NCBI GenBank assembly: GCA_002269645.1
Contig: NIVC01000609.1
Coordinates: 1 to 64,000 of the forward strand
DNA length: 64,000 bases
Direction of reading: 5' to 3'
Origin: Macrostomum lignano
Lineage: Eukaryota
Of the stretch, positions 13,501 through 57,661 are shown piece after piece. A program made the translations under genes and the position numbers. The number at the start of each line of letters is the position of its first letter. Position 1 is the first letter of the stretch. The notes beneath the pieces were generated by a model. The model was not told the origin of the DNA, ran no database searches, and saw only the letters and a list, made by a program, of their open reading frames with translations.

Positions 13501-16180
13501 ACTAAAATGGCATCTCTAAACAGACATGGCATCTCTCCACGACTCCACACTGAAATGGCACTCTCCACACTGAAGTGGAATCTTTCCAAACTGAAATGCC
13601 ATCTCTAAACAGACATGGCACCTCTCCACACTGAAATGGCATCTCTAAACAGACATGGCATCTCTCCACACTAAAATGGCATCTCTAAACAGACATGGCA
13701 TCTCTCCACGACTCCACACTGAAATGGCACTCTCCACACTGAAGTGGAATCTTTCCAAACTGAAATGCCATCTCTAAACAGACATGGCACCTCTCCACAC
13801 TGAAATGGCATCTCTAAACAGACATGGCATCTCTCCACACTAAAATGGCATCTCTAAACAGACATGGCATCTCTCCACACTGAAGTGGAATCTCTCCACA
13901 TTGAAATGCCATCTCTAAACAGACATGGCACCTCTCCACACTGAAGTGGAATCTCTCCACATTGAAATGAATGAAATGAATGAATGAATGAATGAAAATG
14001 AAATGAATCTCTCCACACTGAAGTGGCATCTCTCTACACTGAAGCGGCATCTCTCCACACTGAAATGGAATCTTTCCAAACTGAAATGCCATCTCTAAAC
14101 AGACATGGCACCTCTCCACACTAAAATGGCATCTCTAAACAGACATGGCATCTCTCCACACTGAAGTGGAATCTCTCCACATTGAAATGCCATCTCTAAA
14201 CAGACATGGCATCTCTCCACACTGAAGTGGAATCTCTCCACATAGAAATGCTATCTCTAAACAGACATGGCATCTCTCCACACTGAAGTGGAATCTCTCC
14301 ACATAGAAATGCTATCTCTAAACAGACATGGCACCTCTCCACACTGAAGTGGAATCTCTCCACATTGAAATGAATGAAATGAATGAATGAATGAATGAAA
14401 ATGAAATGAATCTCTCCACACTGAAGTGGCATCTCTCTACACTGAAGCGGCATCTCTCCACACTGAAATGGAATCTTTCCAAACTGAAATGCCATCTCTA
14501 AACAGACATGGCACCTCTCCACAGAGAAATGCCATCCCTAAACAGACATGGCATCTCTCCACACTGAAGTGGAATCTCTCCACATTGAAATGCCATCTCA
14601 AAACAGACATGGCATCTCTCCACACTGAAGCGGCATCTCTCCACACTGAAATGGAATCTTTCCAAACTGAAATGCCATCTCTAAACAGACATGGCATCTC
14701 TCCACACTGAAGTGGAATCTCTCCACATTGAAATGCCATCTCTAAACAGACATGGCATCTCTCCACACTGAAGTGGCATCTCTCCACACTGAAATTGAAT
14801 CTTTCCAAACTGAAATGCCATCTCTAAACAGACATGGCACCTCTCCACATTGAAATGCCATCTCTAAACAGACATGGCATCTCTCCACACTGAAGTGGAA
14901 TCTCTCCACACTGAAGTGGAATCTCTCCACATTGAAATGCCATCTCTAAACAGACATGGCACCTCTACATACTGAAATGACATCTCTCCACACTGAAATG
15001 GAATCTCTCCACACTGAAATGGCATCTCTCCACACTGAAATGGAATCTCTCCACACTGAAATGGAATCTCTCCACACTGAAATGGAATCTCTCCACACTG
15101 AAATGGCATCTCTCCACACTGAAATGGCATTTCTCCACACTGAAATGGAATCTCTCCACACTGAAATGGCATCTCTCCACACTGAAATGGAATCTCTCCA
15201 CAGTGAAATGGCATCTCTCCACACTGAAATGGAATCTCTCCACACTGAAATGGCATCTCTCCACACTGAAATGGAATCTCTCCACACTGAAATGGAATCT
15301 CCACACTGAAATGGAATCTCTCCACACTGAAATGGCATCTCTCCACACTGAAATGGCATTTCTCCACACTGAAATGGAATCTCTCCACACTGAAATGGCA
15401 TCTCTCCACACTGAAATGGCATCTCTCCACACTGAAATGGAATCTCTCCACACTGAAATGGAATCTCTCCACACTGAAATGGCATCTCTTCAAACCTGAA
15501 TAGCTGAAAACAATCAATACAGACACATCGAAGCAGCCTAGATATAGATTCAAGTGCTTGAACGGTTTGGATTGCAAGGAACGAACCTGTTCAGCCGCTA
15601 GCAGAGCTTCAACAAGCGACGAGCCTTGCTGTGCAGCCACAGACGGATATTGTTGAATAGCGTAGAGCAATAGGCCAGCCTGCTCTAGGGCGCTGCCAAC
15701 TGATTGGCCATATTTCAGCAACAGCTCGCATTGCAGCCGGCCGGGCAGGCGGCCAAACAGTGCGGTTGAGGCGGCATCTCCATCAGCTTTAGTCACGCCT
15801 TCCAGTACTCGGCTGAGCTCCTGATAAAACAGCGCCTCGTTGGGATTTTCGGCGTACATTTGCATGAAAGCGGCCGCCGCCGCGTCCCAATCGGCTTCAT
15901 CTCTGGCTAACTGATAGGCCCAGCGGCGAACTTTGAAACTGTCTCGCCAAAGGCATTTAGCCAGTGCCAGATGACACCTGGCTAGCTGATAATCACCTTG
16001 GCTAGAGCGGGTTTCAATTGCTGAGCAGACGAAATCAACATCAGCTTCTAAGCGTTTCGATGCCGGCACTAATGGAGGCGGCTCGGTGGAACCTGATGAA
16101 GACGATGGGGCAGAGGCTGGAGCCGAGGAACCAGACGATGGCGGTGCAGCTTTGCGCTTTAGCTTGTTTGATGACGACAT
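10541..16180 (-). CDS. INTS10: Integrator complex subunit 10, about 709 aa
   Basis: Exons 16180-15587, 13203-12847, 12278-11736, 11176-10541, all phase 0 with GT-AG. LFGRLPGRLQCELLLK, QQGSSLVEALLAAE, HRKCLVVDVLPVLL, IGHCLVLLQRDWP and QMDRCHDNLAELLYRFVRAE match human INTS10 (LFETLPGRVQCEMLLK, GEALLEAE, FRKLFVCDVLPLII, LGHVIVLLQQEWP). The summed length is almost identical to human INTS10. Confidence 0.92.
11380..11670 (-). mobile_element. tRNA-derived CORE-like SINE in INTS10 intron 3
   Basis: Reverse complement: tRNA head with A/B boxes, then tgtgtccttgagcaagacacttaactc...ctgtaaaatggg, which resembles the MIR/CORE consensus tgaccttgggcaagtcacttaacctc...ctgtaaaatggg. Confidence 0.85.
12378..12755. 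repeat. Minisatellite, 20 nt, cacctagcgataacaaatgg (INTS10 intron 2)
   Basis: Tandem copies. Confidence 0.93.
13320..15492. repeat. Minisatellite, 21 nt, atctctccacactgaaatggc, with higher-order blocks (INTS10 intron 1)
   Basis: Tandem copies with interspersed tctaaacagac variants and a duplicated (tgaa)n insert. Confidence 0.95.
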
Positions 16181-17190
16181 TCCAAAGGAAAATAAATACA
16201 ATGGCTGCACTGAAAATGTTTCATTATTTGAGTTTATGCTCAATTATATTTTTTGTGCTTTTGTGAATTATTTACATCATTGTTAAGTCGATGGCCTGAG
16301 TGGGTAGCTTTATAAAGCTATTGATAAAGTTCCTAATAAAGCTGTTGATGAAGAGCTGCCAATAAAGCTGTTAATGAAACAGCTGATATTGCTAACACTA
16401 ATAAACTTGCATTAGCCTAAGACAGCTATTTACCTTTATTATAGATAATAAAAGCTGCAATATAAAATGTAACATGTCAAGTATTTCTCTAAATTCATTG
16501 TGTTCATTGCAATTTCCATTGAACATAGGCTATATTTAGGAAAATCTAGGCCTTTAAGCTAACAAAGCAACAAAGCAGCTAATAGCCCTATTGCAGCCAG
16601 AGTTTGAATTGCTCTAGATGCCCCATGTAACAATCTTATTCTATATTTACCTGCAAAGCATTTGGCTTTTAGGTCATATTTTTAAAAAAGTTATTACTAG
16701 TTAGCTTATTGAAAAAGATTTTTGGTAACAACTACTTCAATGACAAGGTTTAGACTAGTTAGTAATAGCCTCAATCAAATCAGTGATATTGCTATAAATT
16801 ATAAGACTTACTTAAGTAAATACAACTTATACATAAATAAGAATATATATATAGAAAGACTACATAGAAAGTATGTATCCCTCTACTTAAGTGCACATAT
16901 CTCTTAAAATCCAAATCCAAATCAATCCTGGTTTAAGTCATTTTAAAGAAGAGGCATGCTGCTTTCAAACGATACCAAACTTATGTCAATGCAACTTACC
17001 AAACGTTTGCTACAAGTAAAAGTAACACTACTTACTTTCCAGACACCTCTTATAGATTGTCTATTGCTGCTTTGATTATTACCTGATCAATATATTGCCA
17101 AATTCTCTTATTGCTAGATTGACTAGACTACAATCTAGAAGCTAAAAAAGGTAATATCATTTGAAAAGAATTAGCTAAGCTAGGGGCCTA

Positions 17191-17851
17191 GGTATCCACA
17201 TTTTGGTGCTTGTGCTTTTTGGTGCCTAGTGTTTAAGTACCCCAGCTTGCTTTTTAGTGCCTAAATTATAATTTAGAATTGGACACAAAAATATAGACAG
17301 TGAGCCCTAATTTAGCAATAAGTGCTTTGCTTTTGCAGTACTTATTTACTTTAAAAAACGAAGGTATTATTTAGTTTGTTAACTGACCTGGTATTTTAAT
17401 TAAAAAAATAGTTTTATTTCATTTAATTTTTTCTCTAGTCTTGCATTCAATTCTAAAAAAAAGATATGATTAAAAAAATCAATACTAAAATAGACAAGTT
17501 ATATGGATTTCAATCAAAACTACATGTAGCATTATTAATAGATTTTATCTTTACCTAACTAAGTCTTCATAGCATGCTTGCTAGGTATAGCCTTATATTT
17601 GTATAAATGATATAGCAAATGTGTGCAATTAAATTGATTGGATTTTTTAAAACTAAAAAAACATACTAGTTTATCAAAATAAATACTAATCTTATTAAAA
17701 ATATTAAACATTTAAAAAATTATTCATTATGTTTGTTATAGGATTTTTTATTATTATCATTTTTGCATTATAGATAAAGATGCTGAAAAGCAATCTGAGG
17801 CACCAAAATGCAGGGCACCAAAATGCATAGGCACCAAAATGCATAGAAACT
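17191..17851. mobile_element. MITE A (GG-starting TIRs with ggcacc(g/a)aaa subterminal repeats, 8-bp TSD)
   Basis: Ends ggtatccacattttggtgc / gcaccaaaatgcatagaaact. Flanks ggggccta (17183-17190) and agggccta (17852-17859). Homologous to MITE B in the opposite orientation. Confidence 0.75.
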
Positions 17852-17878
17852 AGGGCCTAAGCATAGGGGCCTAATATT

Positions 17879-18681
17879 GGCATACTTTCATTATAGAAGA
17901 CCCAAAAATGCGTGACTTTTATAATGGAAGACCCATGGAAAAGGGGAAGAAATCAATCGAAAAACGAGCATTCACTAACAAAATGAAAGCGTAGCAAAAG
18001 TTAATTCCACACAAAGTTGATGCTTTAATTGACAGTGCTTAATTTCACACAAAGTTGTTATACTGTAATTGCAAGCGTTTATTCCACCAATCTCATACCC
18101 AGCCTGGCACCCTCCCTCACCTTCAAAAAAGAAGACCCAACTCATTTCACCTAAGTATTTACAACACTGAGGTCTTGCATTACGAAAGTAAGAGACCTTA
18201 ATGTTAAACTTACTTCTGCAGAATTTCCAACAGGTAACCGACAATGAACATCGTGATGTCCATTGGGTGCAGCTTCGACCTCTCTTAAAAGCTTCTATAT
18301 CCCCTACTTTTGTTTCAGAAGACCTTTAATGGATGCTTAACATTGTCAGTCTTTTAAAACGAAACTGTATATATCATAGAAAATGTACCCAAGGCCGACA
18401 CAGGAAAACAAACCCTACGTTTCTGCAGCTTTTGTTGCTGCCACCCCTACTACCTTCATTTTGGAAGACCTTCAATGAAATAGTAGCTTGACAGTCTTCT
18501 AAAACGAAACTGTAATATAAACTGTAATAAAGGACACACAAAGCCATTAAGAATAAACAAACAAAATAATAGACAACAATATATATATAAGTAGCTTCTT
18601 ATGTATTAGGCGGGTCTTCTTTTTTGAAACTGCCAGCTTCCTATTTAATACATAGAGGGTCTTCTAAAACAAAAGAATGCC
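17879..18681. mobile_element. MITE C, non-autonomous DNA transposon with perfect 8-bp TSD
   Basis: TIR ggcatactttcattatagaagaccc versus reverse complement ggcattcttttgttttagaagaccc (21/25). TSD ctaatatt at 17871-17878 and 18682-18689. Internal gaagacc repeats. Confidence 0.8.
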
Positions 18682-19725
18682 CTAATATTATAATTGTTTG
18701 TTATTTTGTTTTTAGTAAATTTAGATTTTTAAGCAAAACTTTTATAGGCCTATTATAGGCCTACCTATACTTAAAAATGTTTGGCTTATATTAAATACTA
18801 GGCCTAGCTACCTAGAGGGGGCTTATCCTGACTCCCGTTGAGTCCTACTCCTAATCATAAATAAGGATTATATGCTGATTTCTAGCTAGACTATAGCCTA
18901 GGATTTCAAGTTACTTTTTCTTTTGTAATGTTTCAATTTCAAAACAAAAACATTATCATTAGGGCCACTAACATCAAAATCAGCACAATAATATTGTAAG
19001 ACAAGTAAGTGCAAATTCATATGTCCTTAAATCAAATGACAAATGCCAATCTGTTATCTGGGATGAAACTTCTCCAAAGAGCATAGAAAATCTGCATAAA
19101 ATTCAAGCACCCACATATAGACCGGTAGACCCTAGTTGTAATTGTAATCAGCTGTTGTTTTGCAGGTAAAAACGTCTAATTTAAATTGGGAATTGCCTAA
19201 TTGACTAGGCCTAACGACAATGGAAAGGAAATGAAAAGTTTCAATGTCTACAAACATATTGTATTTATTTAAACATTGATAACAATCGATATTATTGTCC
19301 TGATTGTGAAAACACTAAATCGTATTCAATTTGAAACTGGACATTTCACATCAGAAATTTTTTAATATCATATTTGACAGTTATTAAAGACGATATTGTT
19401 ATTTAATCGCATTTCTTTTTAGTCGCACGCGCACGTACGATCGGAGGGAATTCCGAGGGAGGACTGAACAGTTGATTCCGATTTCATGCGGAATTTAAAA
19501 ATGTTTTTATTTTAAAACTGACATTAAACAAAGCTGCTTATAACAGCTCATTCGTTAAGAAGATTTTACGACTTTATTGTTGCTTAGTGAATTTTATCGA
19601 CTTTTTCACACAACGCAATATTTTTCTCAAGTATGTTTTCCTGTGAATAATACTCCTTGCTTTCTTAGAATGGGTCACTAATTTGAGGGGACGAGGCGTT
19701 GTTGGCATCGAAGGCATGCAATGAC

Positions 19726-20003
19726 TAGAGCTCGGCACCGTACCGGAACCTGTTTTCTAACGGCTATGGATCCGGCAGTGCATTATAATATAGACAGAAC
19801 ATTATAATTTTCTTTCTACAGGTATTGATATTGAGATTTTGTTCTAAATAAGATTCAAGACGATATGATAAGATTCGAAACAACAAGATGCTTCTAATGT
19901 TCAGACTTGTTAAGATATGTTCTTAGTAGTGTTTTGGTATGCTTTTATACGGCACTGCCGGATCCATAGCTGTTAGAAAACGGGTCCCGGTGCCGAAACT
20001 CTA
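19726..20003. mobile_element. MITE D, hAT-like (TAG-starting TIR, about 50 bp)
   Basis: tagagctcggcacc...ttttctaacggctatggatccggcagtgc mirrored by gcactgccggatccatagctgttagaaaa...ggtgccgaaactcta. Flanks gcaatgac / gccattac (6/8). Confidence 0.7.
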
Positions 20004-20422
20004 GCCATTACCAGCATCGAAACTCAACTCTGTTGCTAAGTCCCCAAATCCATGCAGGAACTTAGAGCTCCACTTTGAGAGTGATGAAAGAATTCATCTC
20101 AACTTTAGCCCCTACCACCCAACCACAATGTGAACATAGCATTGACCATCTATGTTGATGCTTGAGTCCTAAATTCCAGGGACTTAATTAATTGAGATTT
20201 AATTAAAAAAAGTACTCACTTTGAAACTGGCAATATTCATTTATTTGAACTAGGCTACTACCCTAACTATATCAAAGCAATAGCTCAAAATATGATATCC
20301 AAAACTTTCCATTTAGGCCTAGTAGAATAATAAACTTTCTATTGTTCTCTGTTGGTAAAACTTTATTAAAATTTTGTAAAATAGTTAAATGTGTAAAACT
20401 AGAGGATAGCCACATTTCTCTA

Positions 20423-21297
20423 GGTTTCCATGCATTTCGGTGCCTGTGCTTTTTGGTGCCTGGCATTTCGGTGCCCTAGATTGCCTTTCGGTGCCCCAGT
20501 TTATATTATGCCAAAATGGTGATAATAAAAAAGAAATCCTATAACAAATATAATATAAACTTTACAAAACGTTTGATATTTTTAATAAAAGCAAAAATAA
20601 TTTTGTGAAACTGGCACGTTTCTTTAAATTGGAAAAATCCGTTCAATTTAATTGCATACATTTGCTGTATTCTGAATTCTGTATATATAATATAAGCTGG
20701 CTGCACTCAGCAAGCATGCTAGTGCTATGAAGACTTAGTTAGGAAAGTTAAAATCTATCAACAATGCTATATATAGTTTTGATTAAAATTATGAAATGTG
20801 ACAAGTGACAATGTGAAATATATGTATTTTAATTAGTATTGATTTTTTGAATCACCCGATCATGTTTTATTTCATAAAACTGCCTAGGAAATGAAGCAAG
20901 TATTATTTAATGAACTGAAATCTTTTTGGGCATAAATATTGGACCATATTCTATAAGATTTTATTATAAGCGCATTTGGGGCATTAGTTTAAAATTTTGA
21001 CGCAGCTGAGACGCGCGGCTATAGTGACATGGAAGTAAATTGAATCGAGTCAACTGGCCTAATCGAAAACCATTTTTTGAATTCATTAAAACAGCAGGTC
21101 AGCCATTTAACTAAATGAATAATACCTTCTTTTTAAAGTAAATAAGTACTGCAAAGACAAAGCACTTATTGCTAAATTAGAGCTCAATCTCTATATTTTG
21201 TGTCCAATTCTAATATATAATTTGGGCACCAAAAAGCAAGCTGGGGCACTGAAATGATCGGCACCGAAAAGCACAGGCACCGAAAAGCGTGGATACC
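20423..21297. mobile_element. MITE B, same family as MITE A, inverted relative to it
   Basis: Ends ggtttccatgcatttcggtgcc / ggcaccgaaaagcgtggatacc. Flanks tttctcta (20415-20422) and tttctgta (21298-21305). Confidence 0.8.
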
Positions 21298-23274
21298 TTT
21301 CTGTATCTATATACTTTGCCTATATCTATATACTTTGTATCTATATCTATATTATCTATATATCCATAGGCCTAGCTATAGCAAAACTCTAGCCTACAGG
21401 GTCCTTGTAGCTTTTAGTAGGGCCTAGGCCTAGCTTAGGGCAACAAGCCTTTGACTAGATGATATGGCTAGTCAATTAAAGTTTTTGCCCATGTAATAGT
21501 TCAGAAGGCTATATCATGCATGTCTTTACATAGAATAGGCCTTTACATAGGCCTTTGCATGCCTTTACATAGTGCATAGAACAATAAGTGGCCTATGCCA
21601 ATCCTTATTGTCATTTCAATCTTTGGCATAAGGCTGCCAAGGTATAAGAACCATTGGCAATCAAGTAAACATGATTATGTCTTAGGCAATATCTCAGTAA
21701 TTGATCTCAGTAGGTAGGTCAGACCCAGAGGTCACCATGAAGACTACTTTTTTCTACATATTTAGCTTAAGGCCAACTTGTGATGTTGCTGCCATTAGCT
21801 TAGGCTATCCAGTAGCTACTAGGTATCTTTAGCTATCAGTGATAGTAATACAAGGCTTTACTTCTTTTGGTGCTATCAACTTATGCATCTTCTTAGCAAG
21901 AAGCCATTATCTAGGTAGGCAAGCTAGTCCTCAATAGGCCAAGCACAAACAAGAAAGATACTACAGTATCACCCTGTAGCACACCTAATGACATTCTTAA
22001 TTGGTCTAATAATCTATTTGATATCATCACTAAAGTGGTTATATCCTAGTGCATTGCCATGATAGTAGAAATAAATTGCTCTGCTATGTTATACATGCAA
22101 AGCATAAGAGGTAGCACACTATAAACAAATAAATTAAAAGCCTTGAAGAAGTAAATGAAGATTATCATGAGACTTGCCAGATAGATGTGCACCTCCTTGA
22201 TGATGCATCAGAGAGCTAGGATCTATATCAATGTAATGCAATATGGGCAGAACCCATTTTACTCAAGGCATAGAAACTAGTCTAGCAAAGGCTACAACTA
22301 AGCTAATAGCACATGGTTGAACAGCTTTGCTGCATAGAACATAGTTGAGATCCCCCTGTGCTCCTCCTGTTATGTCATGCTTGGCTTCTTTGGAATCACA
22401 ATGATATGTATAGTTGTCCACTTATGAGATGTGGCACCTCCAGAGAGGACATTCAAATAGTACACCCGGTGGAATCACAGTTAGGAACACCCGTGAAGGT
22501 ATTCTAGATTTACTCTAGTTTTAAGTCGTAAACAGTTCACCTTTCCAAAGTAATTCGGTCTTCATAACTATATAAATGTTAAAATATCAACTGATATTCT
22601 TATCATATTTTTTTATTAAAGTTTACAAGATATAAAAACAATATTTTTAAACGATTGTTCCAATTTTTATTTGGACAACTTAAATATCCAGACATTCGAA
22701 TATATTTTACATTTCCCTTAATAAAATATATCTTACGTAACACAGTTTATTTTAAACAATATAAGAACATTTTTACGTTTAAAGTTCACGACAAAATGGA
22801 TATTAGGGAACTTAAAAAAGGGAACGACACGTTATGATTAAATAAAATAATCGAACCGTCATTGTGACTTATATTATATATCCTAAATCAGGTAATTCGA
22901 AGAAAAATCTAGTCGTTACAAACCGTTTTTAAAATTTTATTGAAAACAAACTTATTGTCTAAATAACTTCAAAACTTGTGAGAAATTTGTTCCCCGGTGA
23001 ATCTTTTCAATATGATACAAAGGGATATCAGAGAAACTGAGATATATTACTGATAGGATAGTAAATCGAACGAACTAATACAAACTTAACAAATTTAAAC
23101 GTTTAGGATTAAAATCTTCTGAAGTTGATTCCCATCGTTTGAAAAAATCCATTTAAATTATTGTAATAGATTAGAATTTAGTCCGTACTAAGACCCCAGT
23201 CGTACTCATCAAATTAATATTAGGACTCTAATGCAATGTCAGATATATTAACTACATTGGAACTGAAAGTCAGT

Positions 23275-23910
23275 TACGACGGTAAATAAGCCGACGTTGA
23301 CAACCGCAACGACGACGACGACGACGAGTCAACCGACGTGGGAGTCGGGTTTCGTAACTTTACGATGTTTTGGCTAAGGCTTCGGTCGTTAAATTGTAAT
23401 CTTCCGACGTCAGGTCTGTTTTAGTCGACGCAGGACGTGAAAGCGTAACTGTTTAGTTGACCTCGGGCAGTAGCGCCGGAGAGGTTAACGACCTTAGACT
23501 TACTGTTTACGCCGTAACGGCTGACAGACATGTGCGGCGTGTCAGCGTAACTTCTGGTACCGAGCACGACGACGTCCTGCCTGCCAACGTTGGAATACCT
23601 CTTAGAAGCTGACCAGTGGAGCGGCGGATGTCGATGGTGATACGGCAGATTTCCGCCGTCATCGGTTCCGTTAGCTTTAAGTTGTAGATTTAGCTCAAAC
23701 TTACTGTCGCCGTTGCTCCCGCCTAACAAACGGTTTCCGCCGAGCCTAGTCCGGCGAAGTCACGACGACAAGTCAAACCGAGGGCACGACCGATAGACGC
23801 AGTGACACCACGAGCCTAAGAAGGAGATATGCTCCGTAGCCCTCGCCGCGTTCTCAGCGAGCCTCAGGCAACCTAACCGGTCGATAGGACAACTATTAGT
23901 GGGCAAAGGC
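23275..23910 (+). CDS. ACVR2: Hidden exon 1 of the ActRII-like receptor (signal peptide, Cys-box ectodomain, TM), in the complemented block
   Basis: Complement translates without stops: MLPFIRLQLLALLLLLLLSWLHPQPKALKCYK...EGCSPDKISCVLH...SNCWNLNDKCGIADCLY...GSCCCRTDGCNL...VLLFSLAPVLAICVTVVLGFFLYTRHRERRK...HPFP, followed by donor gtgaga. Confidence 0.92.
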
Positions 23911-26900
23911 CACTCTGGAACACGGTTTAAGTAAAAAGTCTACATCGAAACAAATACGGTGAGATAAGATATATCAATCGTAAACACGGTAGGATAAGAT
24001 CAACATCATCATAAACACGGTGGGATAAGGTCGACATCACCATAAACACGGTGGGATAAGGTCGACATCAATCATAAACACGGTGGGATAAGGTCGACAT
24101 CACCATAAACACGGTGGGATAAGGTCGACATCATCATAAACACGGTGGGATAAGGTCGACATCAATCGTAAACACGGTGAAATAAAATCGACATCAATCG
24201 TAAACACGGTAGGATAAGATCGACATCATCATAAACACGGTGGGATAAGGTCGACATCACCATAAACACGGTGGGATAAGGTCGACATCAATCATAAACA
24301 CGGTGGGATAAGGTCGACATCACCATAAACACGGTGGGATAAGGTCGACATCATCATAAACACGGTGGGATAAGGTCGACATCAATCGTAAACACGGTGA
24401 AATAAAATCGACATCAATCGTAAACACGGTAGGATAAGATCGACATCAATCGTAAACACGGTAGGATAAGGTCGACATCAATCGTAAACACGGTAGGATA
24501 AGGTCGACATCAATCGTAAACACGGTAGGATAAGATCGACATCAATCGTAAACACGGTAGGATAAGATCGACATCAATCGTAAACACGGTAGGATAAGAT
24601 CGACATCAATCGTAAACACGGTAGGATAAGATCGACATCATCATAAACACGGTGGATAAGACCGACATCAATCGTAAACACTGTAGGATAAGGTCGACAT
24701 CATCATAAACACGGTGGGATAAGATCGACATCATCATAAACACGGTGGGATAAGGTCGACATCATCATAAACACGGTGGGATAAGGTCGACATCATCATA
24801 AACACGGTGGGATAAGGTCGACATCATCATAAACACGGTGGGATAAGGTCGACATCAATCGTAAACACGGTGGGATAAGGTCGACATCATCATAAACACG
24901 GTGGGATAAGGTCGACATCATCATAAACACGGTGGGATAAGGTCGACATCATCATAAACACGGTGGGATAAGGTCGACATCATCATAAACACGGTGGGAT
25001 AAGGTCGACATCAATCGTAAACACGGTGGGATAAGGTCGACATCAATCGTAAACGCGGTGGGATAAGGTCGACATCATCATAAACACGGTGGGATAAGGT
25101 CGACATCATCATAAACACGGTGGGATAAGGTCGACATCATCATAAACACGGTGGGATAAGGTCGACATCAATCGTAAACACGGTGGGATAAGGTCGACAT
25201 CATCATAAACACGGTGGGATAAGGTCGACATCATCATAAACACGGTGGGATAAGGTCGACATCATCATAAACACGGTGGGATAAGGTCGACATCAATCGT
25301 AAACACGGTGGGATAAGGTCGACATCAATCGTAAACGCGGTGGGATAAGGTCGACATCATCATAAACACGGTGGGATAAGGTCGACATCATCATAAACAC
25401 GGTGGGATAAGGTCGACATCATCATAAACACGGTGGGATAAGGTCGACATCATCATAAACACGGTGGGATAAGGTCGACATCAATCGTAAACACGGTGGG
25501 ATAAGGTCGACATCAATCGTAAACGCGGTGGGATAAGGTCGACATCAATCGTAAACACGGTGGGATAAGGTCGACATCAATCGTAAACGCGGTCGACGTC
25601 GAACTTCCTAAACGTAGAGTCAAAATCGGCGGAATAATAATTATTTCTAGATGAAATGCTGGGTAATTAATGGACAAGATTCCACCCGGTGGACAGGTCG
25701 GTATAAGCCGATTTCCTCGCGGACCGTTGGCCGTTTAAGCCGACGCACATGTAACCGCTTCTGCGGCTCTGCCTAGTCGCTCATCGGCATTTCCACAAGG
25801 GCGGCGTCCTCGCCCCGTCGACCGATCAACTCGTCCTCGACATGTCGGACGGCCTCTACTCAGTGGGGTTGTATGAGACGAAATAGCCCCGGCTAGTCAC
25901 GCCGGTCCCAGGTCTGGACGCGGATACCAATCAGTGGCTCATGGTGGGCGACCCTTCACGAGTGCTGATGGACCGGCCGGTGTGCCAGAGGACCTAGGTC
26001 GACGAGCTAGATCGGCTCAGGGAGTCGGCGCCGGACCGTAAGGACGTGCTCTCGTCGTCGCTCTTTGGGCGATAACGAGTAGCCCTATAGTTTTCAGCTT
26101 TGCACAATTAATCCAGCCTGGATTCGACGACGTAACGGCTAGACCCTAACCGATTCTTCAAAAAAGTCCCGCTCAGATAGCCGCTGCAAGTAGGCGTCCA
26201 AACATGAAAATAAACTATCAACACAGAGTCTTACAGTCACGTCTATAACCAGTCATGAAAGTCTAGCGTCTGGTTGATAGACAGTCATCAAAGTCTAGTG
26301 TCTGGTTGATAGACTGTCGTAAAAGTCTAGCGTCTGGTTGATAGACTGTCATCAAAGTCTAGTGTCTTGTTAATAGACTGTCATCAAAGTCTAGCGTCTG
26401 GTTGATAGACTGTCGTCAAAGTCTAGCGTCTGGTTGATAGACTGTCGTCAAAGTCTAGCGTCTGGTTGATAGACTGTCATCAAAGTCTAGCGTCTGGTTG
26501 ATAGACTGTCGTCAAAGTCTAGCGTCTGGTTGATAGACTGTCATCAAAGTCTAGCTTCTGGTTGATAGACTGTCGTCAAAGTCTAGCGTCTGGTTGATAG
26601 ACTGTCGTCAAAGTCTAGCGTCTGGTTGATAGACTGGTCGTCAAAGTCTAGCGTCTGGTTGATAGACTGTCGTCAAAGTCTAGCGTCTGGTTGATAGACT
26701 GTCGTCAAAGTCTAGCGTCTGGTTGATAGACAGTCATCAAAGTCTAGTGTCTTGTTAATAGACTGTCATCAAAGTCTAGCGTCTGGTTGATAGACACAGC
26801 AGTTTCAGATCGCAGACCAACTATCTGTCTTGACTTACTTGACTTAGCTGCAGGGGGCGTCCGGCGGATGCAGCGGGGAGGGGGAGGAGACCGCCCATTC

Positions 26901-29900
26901 CGCTAGCCCCTGGCGACCAACGACTTCCGTTGAAGTGGTGTCGCTCAGGGGGACCCGTCGGTCTCGCCTGCAGCGCGGTCCTCCTCACCGACGGTGGGGA
27001 AGAAATCAGCTCGTCCGGTGTCCCTGAGGTACCGGGCGAGCAGCGGGATGCTCTCGGGCCTGCAAACGTCGGAGAGAACCGGGTTTGGCCCGAGGTGAGT
27101 AAGCCTGGCCCTGGTGAAAACCGGGCAGTGGCAGATAAAATGCTCGGCGTTTTCACTGCCTGAGCGGCAGAAGGGGCACCGCTCCTCGGGTACTTGGCCC
27201 TGAAGGAAGCGGTGGCGAGAGAAGCAGCCATGCCCGGAGAGGGCCATGCTAACTGCTCTGAGGTCTCTGCGGTTGAGCCTGAGGAGGGCTCTACGCAGGA
27301 GAGGAGAGGGACAGGGGACGGCAGCACGGGATTGCCTACAATTCCGGGTGTCGTGCCACCTGTGGAGATGCTCGGAGTCAGCCCAGCGCTTAACGCGGGA
27401 ATTGATCACCGAGGCGGGGATGGGGGCACCCGGGCCCGGCCCCAATAGCGCGCCGGCGGAGCCAGCCTTGGCCAGCAGGTCAGCGCGCTCGTTGCCGAGG
27501 AAGCCGGCGTGGCCCGGGATCCATCTGAGCTCCACCTGGTTGCCTAGCGCAAGCCCGTTGAGCTGGGTGTTGCAGTCCAGGACGGACCTGGAGCTGGCGG
27601 TGCTGCGGCAGAGGGCCCGAAGGGCTGCTTGGCTGTCAGAGTGAAAAATAAATTTCCGGCCGCTAAGCTGCCTTCGGCGCAGCTCTGCGCGCAGGAGCTG
27701 ATGGCAAGCACCTCGCTCTGAAAAACACTGGAGTTGAGCCCAGTGTGCTGGGAGTAGTTCCACACCACTTCTCCATTGAAGAAGACGCAAGCTCCGAAGC
27801 CTGAAAGACCATGCCTCATAGAGCCGTCAGTGTAACAGTGGACTTCAGAGTCGCTCCAGCTGTCACTCGCCTCGTGTCGAGGCTGAATGGTGACCTTATA
27901 CCTTTGGCTCAGGAGAAGGGTGGCTGGGATCGAGTCTTAACCACGCGGGCTACGGGGCGAGAGCCCTCAAGCCCTTCGCAATATTGGCGCCACTTGGCCG
28001 TCTTGGCCCTTCTGACTTGGCCCTTAAACTCGTGGATCGCACGGGTATAGGCCTCTCTGTCAGATGGGTCTTTGGTTTTGAGCGCTCGCCTTTGGAGGGT
28101 CCTGGCTCGGCGCCGAAGGGCCCCGAGCTCTGGGTTCCACCAGGGAGCAGATTTCTTGCCTTTATAGGCCTTTAGGGGGCAGGCTGCTTCAAAGGCAGTG
28201 GTAATCGCCCCGCCCAGGGAGGAGGCGAGATCGTCCACCACCTGGCAGTCAGAGAGGTCACTGGGGGGTCAAGATCCCGAAGGCCGCGGCTCAGCTTCGA
28301 GCCAAAGGCGGCCCAATCGGTGTTCCTGACGTTCCGACTCCAAGTGACCTTAGGCTTTTGCTTGGTCGGCTCAATGCAAAAGCGGATAAAGCGGTGGTCC
28401 GAGAGCGAGTCCTCGTCCCACACTCGCCAGCCCGTAACTGCGGAAAGCAGTCCGGGTGAGGCGATGGTGGTGTCGATGACTTCGGCTCACCGCCCATTAT
28501 TGAACGTTGGTGCATTGCCCACGTTACAGAAGTTGAGGTTAGTGCTGCTGACATAGGCCAGCAGCTCCTCGCCTCTGTTATTGGTGTTCCTGCTGCCCCA
28601 ATGCAGGTGGTGTGCGTTCACATCCCCTGCAATGAGCAGCTCGAACCGACGGGACGCGGCGTAGTCAATCAGGTTGACTAGTACGCCGCAGACTACTGGG
28701 GCATCGCCTGGAAAATAGGCAGAAGCTACCAGCACAGGTTTATTGGGAATGAGGTTATTGATTTGAACAACACAGATGTCCCCAGTCGAGAGATCAGGTC
28801 TCATCCATGCCTCAAAAGCTTTTGCAGCAAAGACCAGAGATCTTGGGCGAGGCTGAGAGCCCGCCATGCAAAAACAGTGGTAGCCAGATGGCACATTATT
28901 TGGCTTACCTTTAGTCATCCAGGGGTCCTGTACGAAGACCAGGCCCGGAAGCTGTTGCTCTGCCGTGCGCATCAGGTTGACCGACGCCGCCACGCAGTGC
29001 TGGGTGTTGATCTGCAGACACCAGGTAGTCGCTGGCATCATTGCAGATCGGATGTTGCAGCCGCCAGGAGTTCCTCCTCCTCCTCGGCGCTCACCGGCTT
29101 CGGGTCGGGGTCGCCGGTGTCCATGGGCTCTTCTTCAGCAAAAGGCCCCCGATTGGCCGGAAGGCAGTAGGCAGCGTTCGCCGCCCTTTGCCCACCATCC
29201 ATGGGGTCCTCCGCCTCAGATTGGCCCAATGCCCTGGAGCAGCCAGCCGCCTGGGCAGGCGGGTCCGTCTCCAGTCGGCCCTGCCCCGAGGGGTTGGGCC
29301 CAGCTGGGACGTCCCCACCCTCCCTGGACGAACTGGTGCGCCTAGGCGTCCCGGCGACCTCTCGCCTCAGCTGGGAGATTTTGGCGGTACGGACTGCCTC
29401 AGCTGCACGCTGGTACAGGCCGCGCCGCTTGGTGCTGCGCGCCGGGCGTCGGTCGCCTCCGCCCTCAGCAGCGCGCTCAGCTTTGCCCGCGCGGCCGTGC
29501 TGCCGGGCAGGGCGGTTTGCTTTGGCAGTCTGAGCAGAGGCTTGCGCCTCGGCCCCGGCCGCCTCCGCATCCCGCCCGCCCTGCTCACTGCCACGGGGAG
29601 GGTCGGCCTCGTAGGAGCGGATGCGCAGCTTCCAAAGGCCGACGTTGATGAAGCTGCCGTGTGGATAACGCCTCATCCAGGCGTCCGACAGCCCCAGGAT
29701 GGCTGTGAAGCCAGTGCCGTCGGTGCGCTTAAGGGTGTCATGCACCACTAGGCCCGCGGCGGGAAGCTCCCGGTTGACTGCTAGCAGTCCTTTCCGGAGC
29801 TCGTCAGCAGAGGTAACAACGCTCCTGGCCGGGACCCAGATTCGATGCCTCTTGGTCCGGGGGCGCTCGTCCTCTCTGCAGAAGGCTAGGTTGAGGTCCC

Positions 29901-32659
29901 AGCTCTGCTCGGGCAGCAGCTCAAGGAGCCGCCGACCCGAGTCAGCATCACTGGGCCAAATGAGAAGGCACGAGTCCCTCGTCGCATTCGAATGAATGTT
30001 CAGAGGCGTGCCCTTCAGAGTTTGCTTCCACAGGAGGCCATCAACGGCACTTCTCACCTGCTTCAGCTGATCGGGAGACAGGCGCGCGTCCTTTCCCAGG
30101 ATGACAACCGCCGGTTGCCTCTTTGCCGCATCAGCGTAGGAGGCCCGGGGGTCAGTGGAGCTTTCTTCAGGTGGGCTGTCCACCCTCCCGGCTGCATCGG
30201 CCTCCCTATCCTGGGCAGGGGCTTCCGTGGGCTCGAGGCCCTCTTCCGCCACCGCCCCAGATTGGGAAGCTTCCGCTGCCGCGGGCCGTTGGCCCCTGGC
30301 GCCGGTTAGGCTTCCGCCCTCCTTGGCCCCCCTCGCCTTGTTAAGTCGACGGCGGGCAGCTCCAGAGGTGGTGCTGCGTTTCTTAGCAGCTGGAGTAGCA
30401 GGTGTCTTCTCGGAGGCACCGCTCAGAGTTGGCTCCACGGGTCTCGCCGAGGCGTCCCCGATGGTAGCAGGTGGTATGGCCGAGGAGTCCACGGCCCCAG
30501 CCGAGGCCGGAGGCACTGTGTCATCCACAGCCGGTTTGTTACTTCGGTTAGAAGCCATTGGCTGGAAGTAAAAAGGTGGGACTTCCTGCAGAACACAGGC
30601 AAAGAGCCGCAAGGCCGCAACCCCAAACCAAGCGGCAGGCCCCCAAAAAGCAAAATACCACCCTGCGGGGGGACCCAAAAGCGCAAGGGGAACCGTTAGC
30701 GACCAGACTACTCCCTGGCCAAGCGTCCATCAGCACGGAGTTACACTGGGACATTAGAGGGTGCGTTTATGGTCACACCAGGACCCGGCGCCAACGAATC
30801 AGCTCGGCAGGGCCCAAGGGGGCCTGCCTTAACACCCACGGGACGAGTACCCTTCGAAGTGCGCCTTGCAAGGTGAAAATCAGGAGACAGAGTCTCTAGA
30901 GCTATCAGCCCGCCAGGGGAGGCAGGTGTGAGCATCGCTGGCTGGGATAAAGGCCATACCAGTCTCATACTGCACAGATAGTTCACCACGCCATTACGTG
31001 CAGGACCCGGGGTCCTGGGGGCAACAGCCCCGGCCCAACTATCTGTCAGTAGTTTCAGATCACAGAACAATTATCTGACAGTAGCTTCAGATTGCATAGC
31101 AGTTATCTAACGGTAGTTTCAGATCACAGAACAATAAATCACTGCAGGTTGGCACCAGGCGCTACATGTCGCCGGAAGTCCTTGAAGGCGCGATGAGTTT
31201 CTACAAGGACAGTTTCCTACGCGTTGATGTCTACTCTCTGGGCCTGGTGCTGTGGGAGATGCTCACCCGCTGTACGGACGCGTACGGAGCCGAAGGCGTG
31301 CCAGCCTACAGGCTGCCATTCGAGGCGGAGACGGGCTCCAGCAACCCCAGCCTGTCGCAGATGCAGGCAGCTGTTGTTATTGAACGCAGGCGGCCGGAGT
31401 TCCCGGCCGAGTGCCAGTCGCATCAGGTGAGTATTATGGCAAAGGCAATAGGAACTGCGCTTTTTAGCTTGCCATTAAAACAGACAGTATCTTAGCAGAC
31501 CTCTGGCAGAGAGTCAAGAAGGTCAAATGCCCCCCTTTTTTAGCAAAAATGGTGTCTTGCGAGTATTGCCTAGTTTAACCCACCATTACACCTTGTATAT
31601 TTACTATTGTTGGCTTCCTAAAGCCATGGCATTTTATAACTGCCCCCCACCTCAAGCCATGGCATCTTATAACTGCCGCCCTTCAAGCCATGGCATCTTA
31701 TAACTGCCGCCCTTCAAGCCATGACATCTTATAACTGCCCTCGCAAGCCATGGCATCTTATAACTGCCGCCCTTCAAGCCATGACATCTTATAACTGCCC
31801 TCGCAAGCCATGGCATCTTATAACTGCCGCCCTTCAAGCCATGGCATCTTATAACTGCCCTCGCAAGCCATGGCATCTTATAACTGCCCTCGCAAGCCAT
31901 GGCATCTTATAACTGCCGCCCTTCAAGCCATGACATCTTATAACTGCCCTCGCAAGCCATGGCATCTTATAACTGCCGCCCTTCAAGCCATGGCATCTTA
32001 TAACTGCCCTCGCAAGCCATGGCATCTTATAACTGCCGCCCTTCAAGCCATGGCATCTTATAACTGCCCTCGCAAGCCATGGCATCTTATAACTGCCGCC
32101 CTTCAAGCCATGACATCTTATAACTGCCCTCGCAAGCCATGGCATCTTATAACTGCCCCCCCCCCTCAAGCCATGGCATCTTAGCAACTCCCCATTGAGC
32201 CAATTGGCATCTCAGCAACTCTCCATTAAGCTTTTTAGCTGCCTTAAAAACTTGTTACGTGTAACTTTATGAGTACGTATAGCACTAAAGCCATTACAGC
32301 ACATTCAAAGTAAAACTGTGGTGCAAAGCTACAGATTATCTGTTCGACCTTGAACTAATTAATCGAATAATCAGGGCTTGTCCTACCTGCGCGAGACCAT
32401 CTGCTGCTGCTGGGACCACGTGCCAGAGGCCCGATTGACAGCCGCCTGCGTAGCCGAACGATGCAAAGCCCTGCGCCGTCTGCCTGTCAGCGTGGCCGCC
32501 GAAGAAGCCAGACGTCGGCAGCAGGAGGAGCAGCTCGCCGATCAGCAGGCGCCCGCCGCAGACCTGCAGCTGCCGCAAGCCGCTGTTATCAACGAAGCAT
32601 CTGCTGCCGCCTCCGCAGAGGAGCTGCGACCGCTGCGCGAAGCTGAGGACGCAGTCTGA
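23275..32659 (+). CDS. ACVR2: Activin type II receptor-like Ser/Thr kinase (TGF-beta type II receptor family), about 571 aa, 4 coding exons; exons 1-2 readable only after in-place complementation
   Basis: Exons 23275-23910, 25683-26198, 31148-31426, 32375-32659, all phase 0. Signal peptide, 10-Cys ectodomain, TM segment, no GS box, complete kinase domain. Confidence 0.9.
23930..25595. repeat. Minisatellite, 31/32 nt (true sequence tagtatttgtgccaccctattccagctgtag), receptor intron 1, inside the complemented block
   Basis: About 50 tandem copies of atcataaacacggtgggataaggtcgacatc as displayed. Confidence 0.95.
25683..26198 (+). CDS. ACVR2: Hidden exon 2 of the ActRII-like receptor (kinase subdomains I-VII), in the complemented block
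   Basis: Complement: acceptor ttctaag, then 172 codons VGHLSSHIRLKERLATGKFGCVY...VAVKVF...HPNILCFIGA...LWLVTEYHPLGS...KPAIAHRDIKSRNVL...CCIADLGLAKKFFQGESIGDVHPQ, then donor gtttgt. Confidence 0.95.
26250..26829. repeat. Minisatellite, 32 nt (true sequence acagcagtttcagatcgcagaccaactatctg), receptor intron 2; continues at 31036-31135
   Basis: Displayed as the complement up to 26795, then in normal sense. Confidence 0.95.
26945..29041 (-). pseudogene. Disrupted ORF2: APE endonuclease, [RT deleted], RNase H, CCHC
   Basis: APE motifs QINTQH, VQDPW, SAYFP, GDVNAHH.WGS, SLSDHRFI. In-frame TGA at 28487-28489. 1-nt frameshifts near 28255 and 27690. RNase H motifs YTDGS, VFQSEVLAI, HSDSQAAL, WIPGHAG..GNERADLLAK. 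C-terminal CPFC...EHFICHC. Confidence 0.88.
29038..30558 (-). CDS. ORF1 (gag-like, DUF4780-like central domain) of the retrotransposon, 506 aa from MASNRS
   Basis: Uninterrupted ORF directly upstream of APE, with a basic low-complexity N-terminus and central LLIWP...RIWVP...ELRKGLLAVN..L. The domain name is from recall, not from a search. Confidence 0.75.
   Translation of the reverse strand: MASNRSNKPAVDDTVPPASAGAVDSSAIPPATIGDASARPVEPTLSGASEKTPATPAAKKRSTTSGAARRRLNKARGAKEGGSLTGARGQRPAAAEASQSGAVAEEGLEPTEAPAQDREADAAGRVDSPPEESSTDPRASYADAAKRQPAVVILGKDARLSPDQLKQVRSAVDGLLWKQTLKGTPLNIHSNATRDSCLLIWPSDADSGRRLLELLPEQSWDLNLAFCREDERPRTKRHRIWVPARSVVTSADELRKGLLAVNRELPAAGLVVHDTLKRTDGTGFTAILGLSDAWMRRYPHGSFINVGLWKLRIRSYEADPPRGSEQGGRDAEAAGAEAQASAQTAKANRPARQHGRAGKAERAAEGGGDRRPARSTKRRGLYQRAAEAVRTAKISQLRREVAGTPRRTSSSREGGDVPAGPNPSGQGRLETDPPAQAAGCSRALGQSEAEDPMDGGQRAANAAYCLPANRGPFAEEEPMDTGDPDPKPVSAEEEEELLAAATSDLQ
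31148..31426 (+). CDS. ACVR2: Exon 3 of the ActRII-like receptor (kinase VIII-X)
   Basis: cag|VGTRRYMSPEVLEGAMSFYKDSFLRVDVYSLGLVLWEMLTRC...YRLPFEAETGSSNPSLSQMQAAVVIERRRP...HQ|gtgagt. Confidence 0.95.
31622..32180. repeat. Minisatellite with alternating 31/28-nt units, caagccatggcatcttataactgcc(gccctt/ctcg)
   Basis: Tandem copies in receptor intron 3. Confidence 0.93.
32375..32659 (+). CDS. ACVR2: Exon 4 (last) of the ActRII-like receptor (kinase XI plus tail)
   Basis: cag|GLSYLRETICCCWDHVPEARLTAACVAERCK...stop. Matches the ActRII pattern [22 protein letters not shown]. Confidence 0.92.
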   Translation, partial: GLSYLRETICCCWDHVPEARLTAACVAERCKALRRLPVSVAAEEARRRQQEEQLADQQAPAADLQLPQAAVINEASAAASAEELRPLREAEDAV

Positions 32660-36233: not shown

Positions 36234-36608
36234 CAATTATAAATACAATTACAAAAGTCAATTAAAATCAAAGTAATTATAGTAATTTCTTAAGCGTTGT
36301 TTTGCAATAGTTTATTTTGCTCAAAATTTACAGTGAGATTTATTAATTAAAAGCGATAGACTTCATTTTCACTATTGAGCTCATTAAAGTTCATTAATAG
36401 CATACAGTATTTTAATGTCGTCTATGTTTATTGAAATGGGGGCGAAGTATGCTACTGACTATATGAATTTGGTAAGTACTAAGTCCGGCGTATATGACTA
36501 AGATAGTATTGGATAAAAATACATGTATTGCTTAGTTCTAATATTCGCTTAGCTTAGAGTAAAGACTTGGGTACAAAATATGCTAAAATGATTAGCAGAA
36601 AAAATCAA

Positions 36609-40116: not shown

Positions 40117-57661
<17,545 letters not shown>

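What the first reader, a model, noticed from the sequence alone, without database searches (positions are those of the whole stretch)
26761..26829. Single-base seam: a minisatellite flips to its parallel complement at 26795/26796
Displayed units read aaagtctagcgtctggttgatagac up to 26795. The next bases are acagcagtttcagatcgcagaccaactatctg, the base-wise complement of the same unit, continuing in exact register with no lost or added base. This fixes the right edge of the block and shows that the order is preserved while the bases are swapped. The seam lies inside a repeat, 34 nt from a retrotransposon end, a typical contig-break or gap-fill position (inference).
Basis: seen in the sequence. 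Interest (0 to 1): 0.7.

Follow-up and report, generated by a model that had tools for sequence, protein, structure and literature searches.

The report
Complemented-not-reversed block: assembly artefact
A 4.3-kb stretch of a public flatworm (Macrostomum lignano) genome contig was written with every base swapped for its partner but not reversed, a data-handling error that hides half of a receptor kinase gene; it is not a biological feature.

Summary
The 32-nt minisatellite at 26258-26795 is followed at 26796-26829 by 34 bases that are the exact, in-register parallel complement of the unit.

The seam is the right edge of a 4342-bp block, 22454-26795, displayed complemented but not reversed.

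- A Markov and dinucleotide test flips sign only inside this block.
- Complementing the block in place makes it colinear, same strand, 94-99% identical with two paralogous loci of the Macrostomum lignano assembly GCA_002269645.1.
- Complementing restores GT/AG splice sites and a four-exon, 571-aa activin-type-II-receptor gene. Exons 1-2 lie in the block and exons 3-4 outside it.
- One kinase domain is split by the seam: Pfam positions 1-154 inside the block, 158-255 outside.
- An independent UniRef model of the same gene copy is identical over 429 consecutive residues spanning that junction.

Window 21160-42659, the stretch retrieved, is base-for-base identical to NIVC01000609.1, so the error is in the public record. 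There the gene is annotated only as a 183-aa partial protein.

The 34 true-sense bases right of the seam end in the 13-bp target-site duplication of a LINE insertion.

No DNA process yields a non-reversed complement, so this is a software artefact. The responsible pipeline step is unknown. Biological interest is low. The practical value is a correctable error in a reference assembly.

The parts
22454..26795 (.). Block displayed as the parallel (non-reversed) complement of the true sequence; 4342 bp.
   Evidence: The log-likelihood ratio of as-shown versus reversed is negative in every 300-nt tile from about 22500 to 26795 and positive on both sides. CG>GC, AC>CA and GA>AG hold only here. Its complement aligns colinearly, same strand, to paralogous loci L001 and L002 at 94-99%. 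The left edge is pinned at 22453/22454 by alignment.
22453..22454 (.). Left seam, between 22453 and 22454, in unique non-coding sequence.
   Evidence: The as-shown sequence matches L001 and L002 up to 22453. The complement matches from 22454 onward with no gap in the paralog coordinate (L001 3999 to 4001). Mismatches are fewest with the cut at 22453.
26795..26796 (.).
   Evidence: The complement alignment to L001 ends exactly at 26795, and the as-shown alignment of array units starts at 26796.
26258..26795 (.). 32-nt minisatellite, the part displayed in complement; it lies in intron 2 of the receptor gene.
   Evidence: TRF. The true unit is TTTCAGATCGCAGACCAACTATCTGACAGCAG, as in L001 and L002.
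26796..26829 (+). Last 34 nt of the array before the LINE, in true sense; it ends with the left copy of the 13-bp target-site duplication (26817-26829).
26830..31034 (-). Non-LTR retroelement with an internal deletion: ORF1, APE endonuclease and RNase H are present, the RT region is missing. It has a (TAAGTCAAG)n 3' tail at its 26830 end and is flanked by the 13-bp TSD CCAACTATCTGTC. It is absent from both paralogous loci.
   Evidence: Pfam Exo_endo_phos_2 E=2.8e-11 and RNase_H E=3.4e-7. Translation shows the APE end and linker running directly into RNase H. TSD. The array is uninterrupted in L001 and L002.
31035..31135 (+). Remainder of the 32-nt minisatellite in true sense; it starts with the right TSD copy (31035-31047).
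23275..23910 (+). Exon 1 of the activin-type-II-receptor gene (signal peptide, Cys-rich ectodomain, TM); readable only after complementing.
   Evidence: GT donor at 23911 in the corrected sequence, shown as CA.
23977..25593 (.). 31-nt minisatellite in intron 1, also displayed in complement.
   Evidence: TRF. Its complement aligns to L001 10855-12117.
25683..26198 (+). Exon 2 (N-terminal half of the kinase domain, Pfam Pkinase positions 1-154); readable only after complementing.
31148..31426 (+). Exon 3 (kinase continues, Pkinase positions 158 onward), readable as shown.
32375..32659 (+). Exon 4 with the TGA stop, readable as shown.

Best explanation
The seam at 26795/26796 is the right edge of a 4342-bp interval (22454-26795) of the deposited contig NIVC01000609.1 (Macrostomum lignano Mlig_3_7, GCA_002269645.1). 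In that interval every base was replaced by its Watson-Crick partner without reversing the order. Equivalently, a piece that should have been reverse-complemented was only reversed.

This is a sequence-handling error made while the assembly was built or processed. It is not a property of the animal's DNA.

The true locus reads straight through. It is a four-exon activin-type-II-receptor kinase gene on the + strand. Its intron 2 holds a 32-nt minisatellite that a LINE inserted into. Because an in-place complement neither adds nor removes bases, the repeat continues in perfect register across the seam.

Shown: the extent of the block, its exact seams, restoration of the gene, splice sites and paralog colinearity on complementation, and identity of window 21160-42659 (the stretch retrieved) to the public record.

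Inferred: that software did it, and which kind of step. The likeliest is a reverse-complement routine that reversed a whole contig but failed to complement one sub-interval, for example a case-sensitive base translation meeting a lower-case stretch. Another possibility is an interval 'inversion fix' that reversed without complementing.
For: - Parallel-complement identity of 34/34 in register at the seam.
- The strand-symmetric Markov log-likelihood ratio is negative (-7 to -31) in all 15 tiles from 22501 to 26701 and strongly positive on both flanks. The cumulative maximum falls at 22458-22504.
- Dinucleotide asymmetries CG/GC, CA/AC and AG/GA are inverted only in 23000-26795.
- In paralogous loci L001 and L002, as-shown 21000-22453 aligns at 99%. 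The complement of 22454-26795 aligns colinearly on the same strand at 94-99%. As-shown 26796-26827 and 31035-31600 align again.
- tblastn with the paralog protein finds only residues 381-568 in the window as shown. After the in-place complement it finds all 568 residues in four colinear + exons at 97-100%.
- GT/AG splice sites appear in the block only after complementing.
- One Pfam kinase domain is split by the seam: positions 1-154 from the block, 158-255 from as-shown sequence.
- UniRef A0A1I8IFU7 (P0124), an independent model carrying this copy's private residues, is identical to the corrected product over 429 consecutive residues crossing the junction between block-encoded and outside-encoded residues.
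- The LINE's two 13-bp TSD copies are both in the as-shown sense, so the right-hand side is the true sense.
- Window 21160-42659 is identical to NIVC01000609.1:21160-42659. The record annotates only a 183-aa partial protein, PAA79901.1, exactly the part outside the block.
- From established DNA chemistry: strands are antiparallel, so inversion, recombination, replication and repair can yield a reverse complement but never a non-reversed one.
Against: - No raw reads, AGP or intermediate assembly files could be inspected, so the claim that reads contradict the record is inferred, not shown.
- The published pipeline (Canu 1.4, Pilon 1.20, SSPACE 3.0) has no step that I know to produce this, and the window holds no N or case information.
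- Only one such block was seen in about 114 kb of this assembly examined (window plus L001 and L002), so a systematic bug is not demonstrated.
- After complementation, divergence and indel rates to the paralogs are the same inside and outside the block. This says nothing about when the error arose.
Confidence: 0.97

Rival explanations
1. A gap fill or contig join, the reader's specific guess: the block was a separate piece (a small contig or a read-derived gap filler) inserted between two contigs with its orientation mishandled.
For: The right seam lies in a minisatellite 34 nt from a copy-specific LINE insertion. The left seam lies 37 nt from a copy-specific 720-bp deletion. Both are places where assemblers break. 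The block's 4.3 kb is in the range of a single PacBio read or small contig (my own knowledge). SSPACE scaffolding was used.
Against: Both seams are exact to the base, with no overlap, loss, gain or N. Joining independently assembled pieces rarely gives that. An already-complemented piece could not have been overlap-merged. No gap-filling program is listed in the methods.
Confidence: 0.25
2. A genuine biological structure: the genome really holds a 4.3-kb segment that is the parallel complement of its paralogs.
For: Only that the sequence stands in a public record and reads could not be checked here.
Against: No known replication, repair or recombination mechanism can make it. The block would need to evolve 97-99% 'identity in complement' to two paralogs, base by base and colinearly. 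It would also need mirrored splice sites, mirrored codons and mirrored genome-wide k-mer bias. An independent model of the same gene copy has it in the normal sense.
Confidence: 0.002
3. An ordinary inversion (reverse complement) or a mirror/palindromic repeat, misdescribed by the reader.
For: Inversions between paralogous regions are reported in M. lignano (PMC10733133). The window is full of tandem and mirror-like low-complexity repeats.
Against: The complement matches the paralogs plus/plus with ascending coordinates, so the order is not inverted. The minisatellite unit does not match itself under complementation. Plus/minus hits of the complemented window are confined to simple purine/pyrimidine and (TAGA)n tracts elsewhere.
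Confidence: 0.005
4. The block was planted in the window by the scan's operators as a test.
For: A clean, single, in-place complemented interval is what a synthetic control would look like.
Against: The independently fetched public record (NIVC01000609.1:21160-42659, via the look-up of encoding contigs) is identical base for base, block included. Its GenBank annotation already shows the consequence, a partial 183-aa gene.
Confidence: 0.01

Closest known systems
Strand-handling errors in sequence records (complement or reverse applied alone instead of reverse-complement)
   Same: The order is preserved and the bases are swapped. The seams are exact. Genes become unreadable until the interval is complemented. 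Strand-symmetric k-mer statistics look time-reversed.
   Different: Such errors usually affect whole submitted records or primers. Here an internal 4.3-kb interval of a long-read contig is affected, and the responsible program is not identified. I found no paper describing this for Mlig_3_7 or in general.
Assembly misjoins and spurious inversions in repeat-rich, polyploid genomes (36% of Mlig_3_7 by length is in chimeric scaffolds, PMC10733133)
   Same: It lies in a neopolyploid genome with three 97-99% identical copies. The edges sit beside copy-specific structural differences and inside a minisatellite.
   Different: A misjoin or inversion keeps valid DNA polarity. This block does not: it is neither chimeric (it is this copy's own sequence) nor inverted.
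Mirror repeats / H-DNA-forming tracts
   Same: Read on the opposite strand, a parallel complement is a reversed copy, formally a mirror relation.
   Different: Mirror repeats are short homopurine/homopyrimidine tracts symmetric about a centre. Here a complex 4.3-kb sequence with exons is mirrored relative to paralogs on other contigs, not relative to a neighbouring arm.
Activin/TGF-beta type II receptor serine/threonine kinases (the gene that the block disrupts)
   Same: The corrected 571-aa product has a signal peptide, a Cys-rich ectodomain, a TM segment and a Ser/Thr kinase. Its best named relatives are activin receptor type-2A/2B at 35-50% identity.
   Different: Pfam's Activin_recp model did not reach threshold on the ectodomain (only a weak CD59-fold hit). 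Function is untested.

Membership tests
Sequence-handling artefact: interval complemented without reversal | The complement (not the reverse complement) of the interval is colinear and same-strand with homologous loci, while the flanks match as shown. | tested here: met
   (L001 and L002, 94-99% identity).
Sequence-handling artefact: interval complemented without reversal | Coding frames, domain continuity and GT/AG splice signals are restored by complementing in place. | tested here: met
Sequence-handling artefact: interval complemented without reversal | Polarity-sensitive k-mer statistics (CG vs GC, CA vs AC, Markov likelihood) are reversed inside the interval only, with abrupt edges. | tested here: met
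   The other negative tiles are single tandem arrays.
Sequence-handling artefact: interval complemented without reversal | Seams have no gained or lost base. | tested here: met
Sequence-handling artefact: interval complemented without reversal | Raw reads contradict the displayed junctions and support the corrected ones. | not testable with these tools
   No read data were reachable. The only indirect support is the independent gene model P0124.
Biological inversion | The interval matches homologs as a reverse complement with inverted order. | tested here: not met
   No minus-strand colinear match of the as-shown block. The match is plus/plus after complementing.
Scaffold gap fill / contig join | A contig boundary, N run or AGP component edge at the seam. 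| tested here: inconclusive
   There is no N in the window. The methods list Canu, Pilon and SSPACE.
Non-LTR (LINE) retrotransposon insertion (the neighbouring element) | APE endonuclease, reverse transcriptase, target-site duplication and a 3' tail. | tested here: inconclusive
   APE and RNase H Pfam hits, a 13-bp TSD and a (TAAGTCAAG)n tail are met. The RT region is absent: the linker runs straight into RNase H. It is therefore an internally deleted copy.
TGF-beta/activin type II receptor kinase (the gene after correction) | Extracellular Cys-rich three-finger domain, a single TM segment and an intracellular Ser/Thr kinase without a GS box. | tested here: inconclusive
   Kinase met (Pkinase E=4e-23 and 1e-7). 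Named best hits are activin receptor 2A/2B. The ectodomain reaches only a sub-threshold CD59-fold hit. Absence of a GS box was not examined.

The most novel reading that the evidence does not exclude
The displayed junctions are real: the M. lignano genome holds a 4.3-kb segment that is the non-reversed complement of its paralogs, made by an unknown polarity-violating copying process. A much more likely but milder reading is that the error is systematic, and many intervals of Mlig_3_7 (and perhaps other assemblies built with the same scripts) are silently complemented. I put that at about 0.3; it would matter for curation, not biology.
Probability: 0.002. Interest if true: 0.95.

Novelty: not a real feature. 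Interest (0 to 1): 0.12.

Why it matters
Biologically it does not matter: the seam is an artefact.

Practically it matters in three ways.

- Mlig_3_7 is the reference assembly for a regeneration and stem-cell model flatworm. The error hides exons 1-2 (384 of 571 residues) of one of three copies of an activin-type-II-receptor gene, which the record annotates as a 183-aa fragment.
- Reads, transcripts and guide RNAs cannot map to the block. Paralog and subgenome comparisons will score it as a 4.3-kb indel.
- The tests used here would find any further cases across this or other assemblies. They are a polarity-sensitive Markov likelihood and alignment of the complemented sequence to paralogs.

Tried and rejected
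- Self-BLAST of the complemented window on both strands was swamped by mirror-like simple repeats ((TAGA)n, purine tracts). Only the plus/plus subset was informative.
- A model trained on L001 and L002 gave extra negative tiles (6301, 6901, 43201, 46801-47401, 57001). Each coincides with a single tandem array, so they are not further blocks.
- Looking up the transcript-derived protein P0001 found no contig. Its cluster members did.
- I tried to sample more of the assembly through homologs of the LINE's RNase H ORF. The search returned only 10 proteins and no NCBI M. lignano contigs, so assembly-wide prevalence could not be estimated.
- A literature search for complement-without-reversal assembly errors found nothing relevant. 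The 2023 subgenome paper mentions chimerism, not this.
- I compared indel rates inside and outside the block to date the error relative to Pilon polishing. There was no difference, so the result is uninformative.
- Case and N information in the FASTA was absent.
- I considered and rejected inversion, mirror repeat, a self-complementary unit, a planted test and real biology (see rival explanations).

Full report
**Observation**

The window holds a 32-nt minisatellite at 26258-26795 (16.8 copies, 93% matches). Laid out in register, the array ends at 26795. The next 34 bases (26796-26829) are the base-by-base complement of the unit, not reversed, with no base lost or added.

A BLAST of the complemented (non-reversed) window against the window, restricted to plus/plus, gives 34/34 identity to one unit and 32/32 to six others. 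The 32-mer occurs once in the window at up to 3 mismatches, against none expected in 100 shuffles. The array does not match itself under complementation, so this is not a quirk of a self-symmetric unit. About three further units in the same sense as 26796-26829 lie at 31035-31135.

**Which side is wrong, and how far it goes**

- Dinucleotide pairs that are not symmetric under reversal (CG/GC, CA/AC, AG/GA) have the opposite bias in 23000-26795 from everywhere else in the window.
- A strand-symmetric third-order Markov model trained outside the region prefers the reversed reading in every 300-nt tile from 22501 to 26701 (log-likelihood ratio -7 to -31). It prefers the displayed reading on both sides. 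The cumulative curve peaks at 22458-22504.
- Other isolated negative tiles coincide with single tandem arrays and are noise.
- No open reading frame of 120 codons or more exists in 16243-26824 as displayed. The complemented sequence has two on the + strand, at 23254-23943 and 25551-26213.

**The gene**

The two complement-only frames encode a signal peptide, a Cys-rich ectodomain and a TM segment, followed by the N-terminal half of a Ser/Thr kinase. The rest of the kinase is encoded as displayed on the + strand at 31148-31426 and 32375-32659.

Pfam places Pkinase profile positions 1-154 in the complemented exon and 158-255 in the displayed exons. That is one domain cut by the seam.

The joined protein finds a 97%-identical, 99%-coverage cluster of Macrostomum lignano proteins. 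Named relatives are activin receptor type 2A/2B at 35-50% identity.

**Source of the window and the paralogs**

The cluster members lead to three loci of assembly GCA_002269645.1 (Mlig_3_7):

| Locus | Record | Protein |
|---|---|---|
| L001 | NIVC01000037.1 | 630 aa |
| L002 | NIVC01001871.1 | 568 aa |
| L003 | NIVC01000609.1 | 183 aa, partial |

L003 (record positions 21160-42659) is identical base for base to window 21160-42659, block included. With matching coordinates, the window appears to be the first 64 kb of that contig. The anomaly is therefore in the public record and was not introduced by the scan.

Against L001 and L002 the alignments run as follows:

- Displayed 21000-22453 aligns at 99%.
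- The complement of 22454-26795 aligns colinearly on the same strand at 94-99%.
- Displayed 26796-26827 and 31035-31600 align again.

The left seam is at 22453/22454: the paralog coordinate runs on without a gap, and mismatches are fewest with that cut. The block is 4342 bp. After complementation its divergence and indel rate to the paralogs equal those of the flanks. It is therefore this copy's own sequence and not a foreign patch. Three 97-99% identical copies fit the three subgenomes described for this neopolyploid (PMC10733133).

**Restoration test**

tblastn with the 568-aa paralog protein finds only residues 381-568 in the window as displayed. After complementing 22454-26795 in place it finds all 568 residues in four colinear + strand exons at 97-100% identity.

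The exon borders then carry GT donors and AG acceptors, which inside the block are displayed as CA and TC. The corrected coding sequence is 1716 nt and encodes 571 aa with a TGA stop.

UniRef A0A1I8IFU7 (P0124) carries this copy's private residues. It is identical to the corrected product over 429 consecutive residues (13-441), crossing the border between block-encoded residues (up to 384) and the rest. It is also identical over the last 94 residues. So an independent gene model of the same copy has the normal sense. My recollection, not checked here, is that this entry derives from the earlier ML2 assembly.

**The neighbourhood of the seam**

The seam lies in intron 2 (26199-31147). The minisatellite was hit by a non-LTR retroelement at 26830-31034 on the minus strand. 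The element has these features:

- A 13-bp target-site duplication, CCAACTATCTGTC, at 26817-26829 and 31035-31047.
- A (TAAGTCAAG)n tail.
- APE and RNase H domains, with the reverse-transcriptase region missing.
- No counterpart in either paralog, where the array is uninterrupted.

Both TSD copies are in the displayed sense. This independently shows that the right side of the seam is the true sense.

**Mechanism**

DNA strands are antiparallel. Inversion, recombination, template switching and repair can produce a reverse complement, never a complement in the same order (established chemistry). A complex 4.3-kb segment with mirrored exons, splice sites and k-mer bias, 97-99% 'identical in complement' to two paralogs, can only be a computational product. 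An in-place base swap also explains the perfect register at both seams.

Which program did it is not shown. The paper lists Canu 1.4, Pilon 1.20 (Illumina and RNA-seq) and SSPACE 3.0 (PMC5730564). The window has no N or case information. My best guesses, both from general experience and untested, are:

- A routine that reversed a whole contig but complemented only some characters, for example a case-sensitive translation meeting a lower-case stretch.
- An interval 'inversion fix' that reversed without complementing.

One unexplained detail: the block length (4342 bp) nearly equals the distance between this copy's two private structural differences. These are the 720-bp deletion junction at about 22490 and the LINE insertion point at 26829/26830. 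Both seams lie 34-37 nt to the left of those points. That hints that an alignment or coverage step defined the interval.

**Comparison with the known, and verdict**

This belongs with strand-handling errors in sequence records. It is not an inversion, a chimeric join or a mirror repeat; each was tested and not met. I found no description of it in the literature held here.

It is not a real genomic feature. The specific contig-break or gap-fill suggestion remains untested.

The consequence is concrete. The GenBank annotation of this copy is a 183-aa partial protein (PAA79901.1) that starts just inside exon 3. Whether more such blocks exist in the 764-Mb assembly could not be assessed. None was seen in the 50 kb of L001 and L002, and the attempt to sample further contigs failed.

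Noticed in passing
window 23275-32659 (+), exons 23275-23910, 25683-26198, 31148-31426, 32375-32659: This is a four-exon activin/TGF-beta type II receptor kinase gene (571 aa after correction), one of three 97-99% identical copies in M. lignano. The public record annotates this copy only as a 183-aa partial protein (PAA79901.1).
   Followed up: yes
window 26830-31034 (-): A GC-rich non-LTR retroelement has ORF1 (563 codons, no Pfam hit), APE and RNase H, but the reverse-transcriptase region is deleted. It carries a 13-bp TSD and a (TAAGTCAAG)n tail, and sits in a minisatellite inside intron 2. It is absent from both paralogous loci, so it inserted after the duplication.
   Followed up: partly
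window 22490-22493 versus L001 4037-4756 and L002 8491-9210: This copy lacks about 720 bp present in both paralogs, 37 nt to the right of the left seam. The distance from this junction to the LINE insertion point (about 4338 bp) almost equals the block length (4342 bp), with both seams offset 34-37 nt leftward. Unexplained; it may be a clue to how the interval was defined.
   Followed up: partly
whole window, e.g. 1031-1587, 8724-9420, 13315-15489, 23977-25593, 34815-36234, 40246-41368, 50136-51970: Minisatellite density is extreme: dozens of arrays with 12-95-nt units and hundreds to thousands of bases each (50 TRF rows at score 200 or more). This fits the reported 15% tandem-repeat content of this genome. 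Many create long spurious ORFs in several frames.
   Followed up: no
window 14867-16243 (-): An ORF with an Integrator subunit 10 N-terminal domain (Pfam INT10, E=6e-15) runs on into the 21-nt tandem array at 13315-15489. This is presumably an exon followed by a repeat-filled intron.
   Followed up: no
L001 5573-10200 versus window 23298-23309: The paralogous locus L001 has about 4.6 kb of extra sequence just upstream of or within the start of exon 1, relative to the window and L002. Its annotated protein (630 aa) has a different, longer N-terminus.
   Followed up: no
P0124 (UniRef A0A1I8IFU7) residues about 430-470: The independent model of this gene copy has a roughly 40-residue out-of-frame stretch in exon 3 relative to the window. 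It looks like uncorrected indel errors in that other assembly.
   Followed up: no
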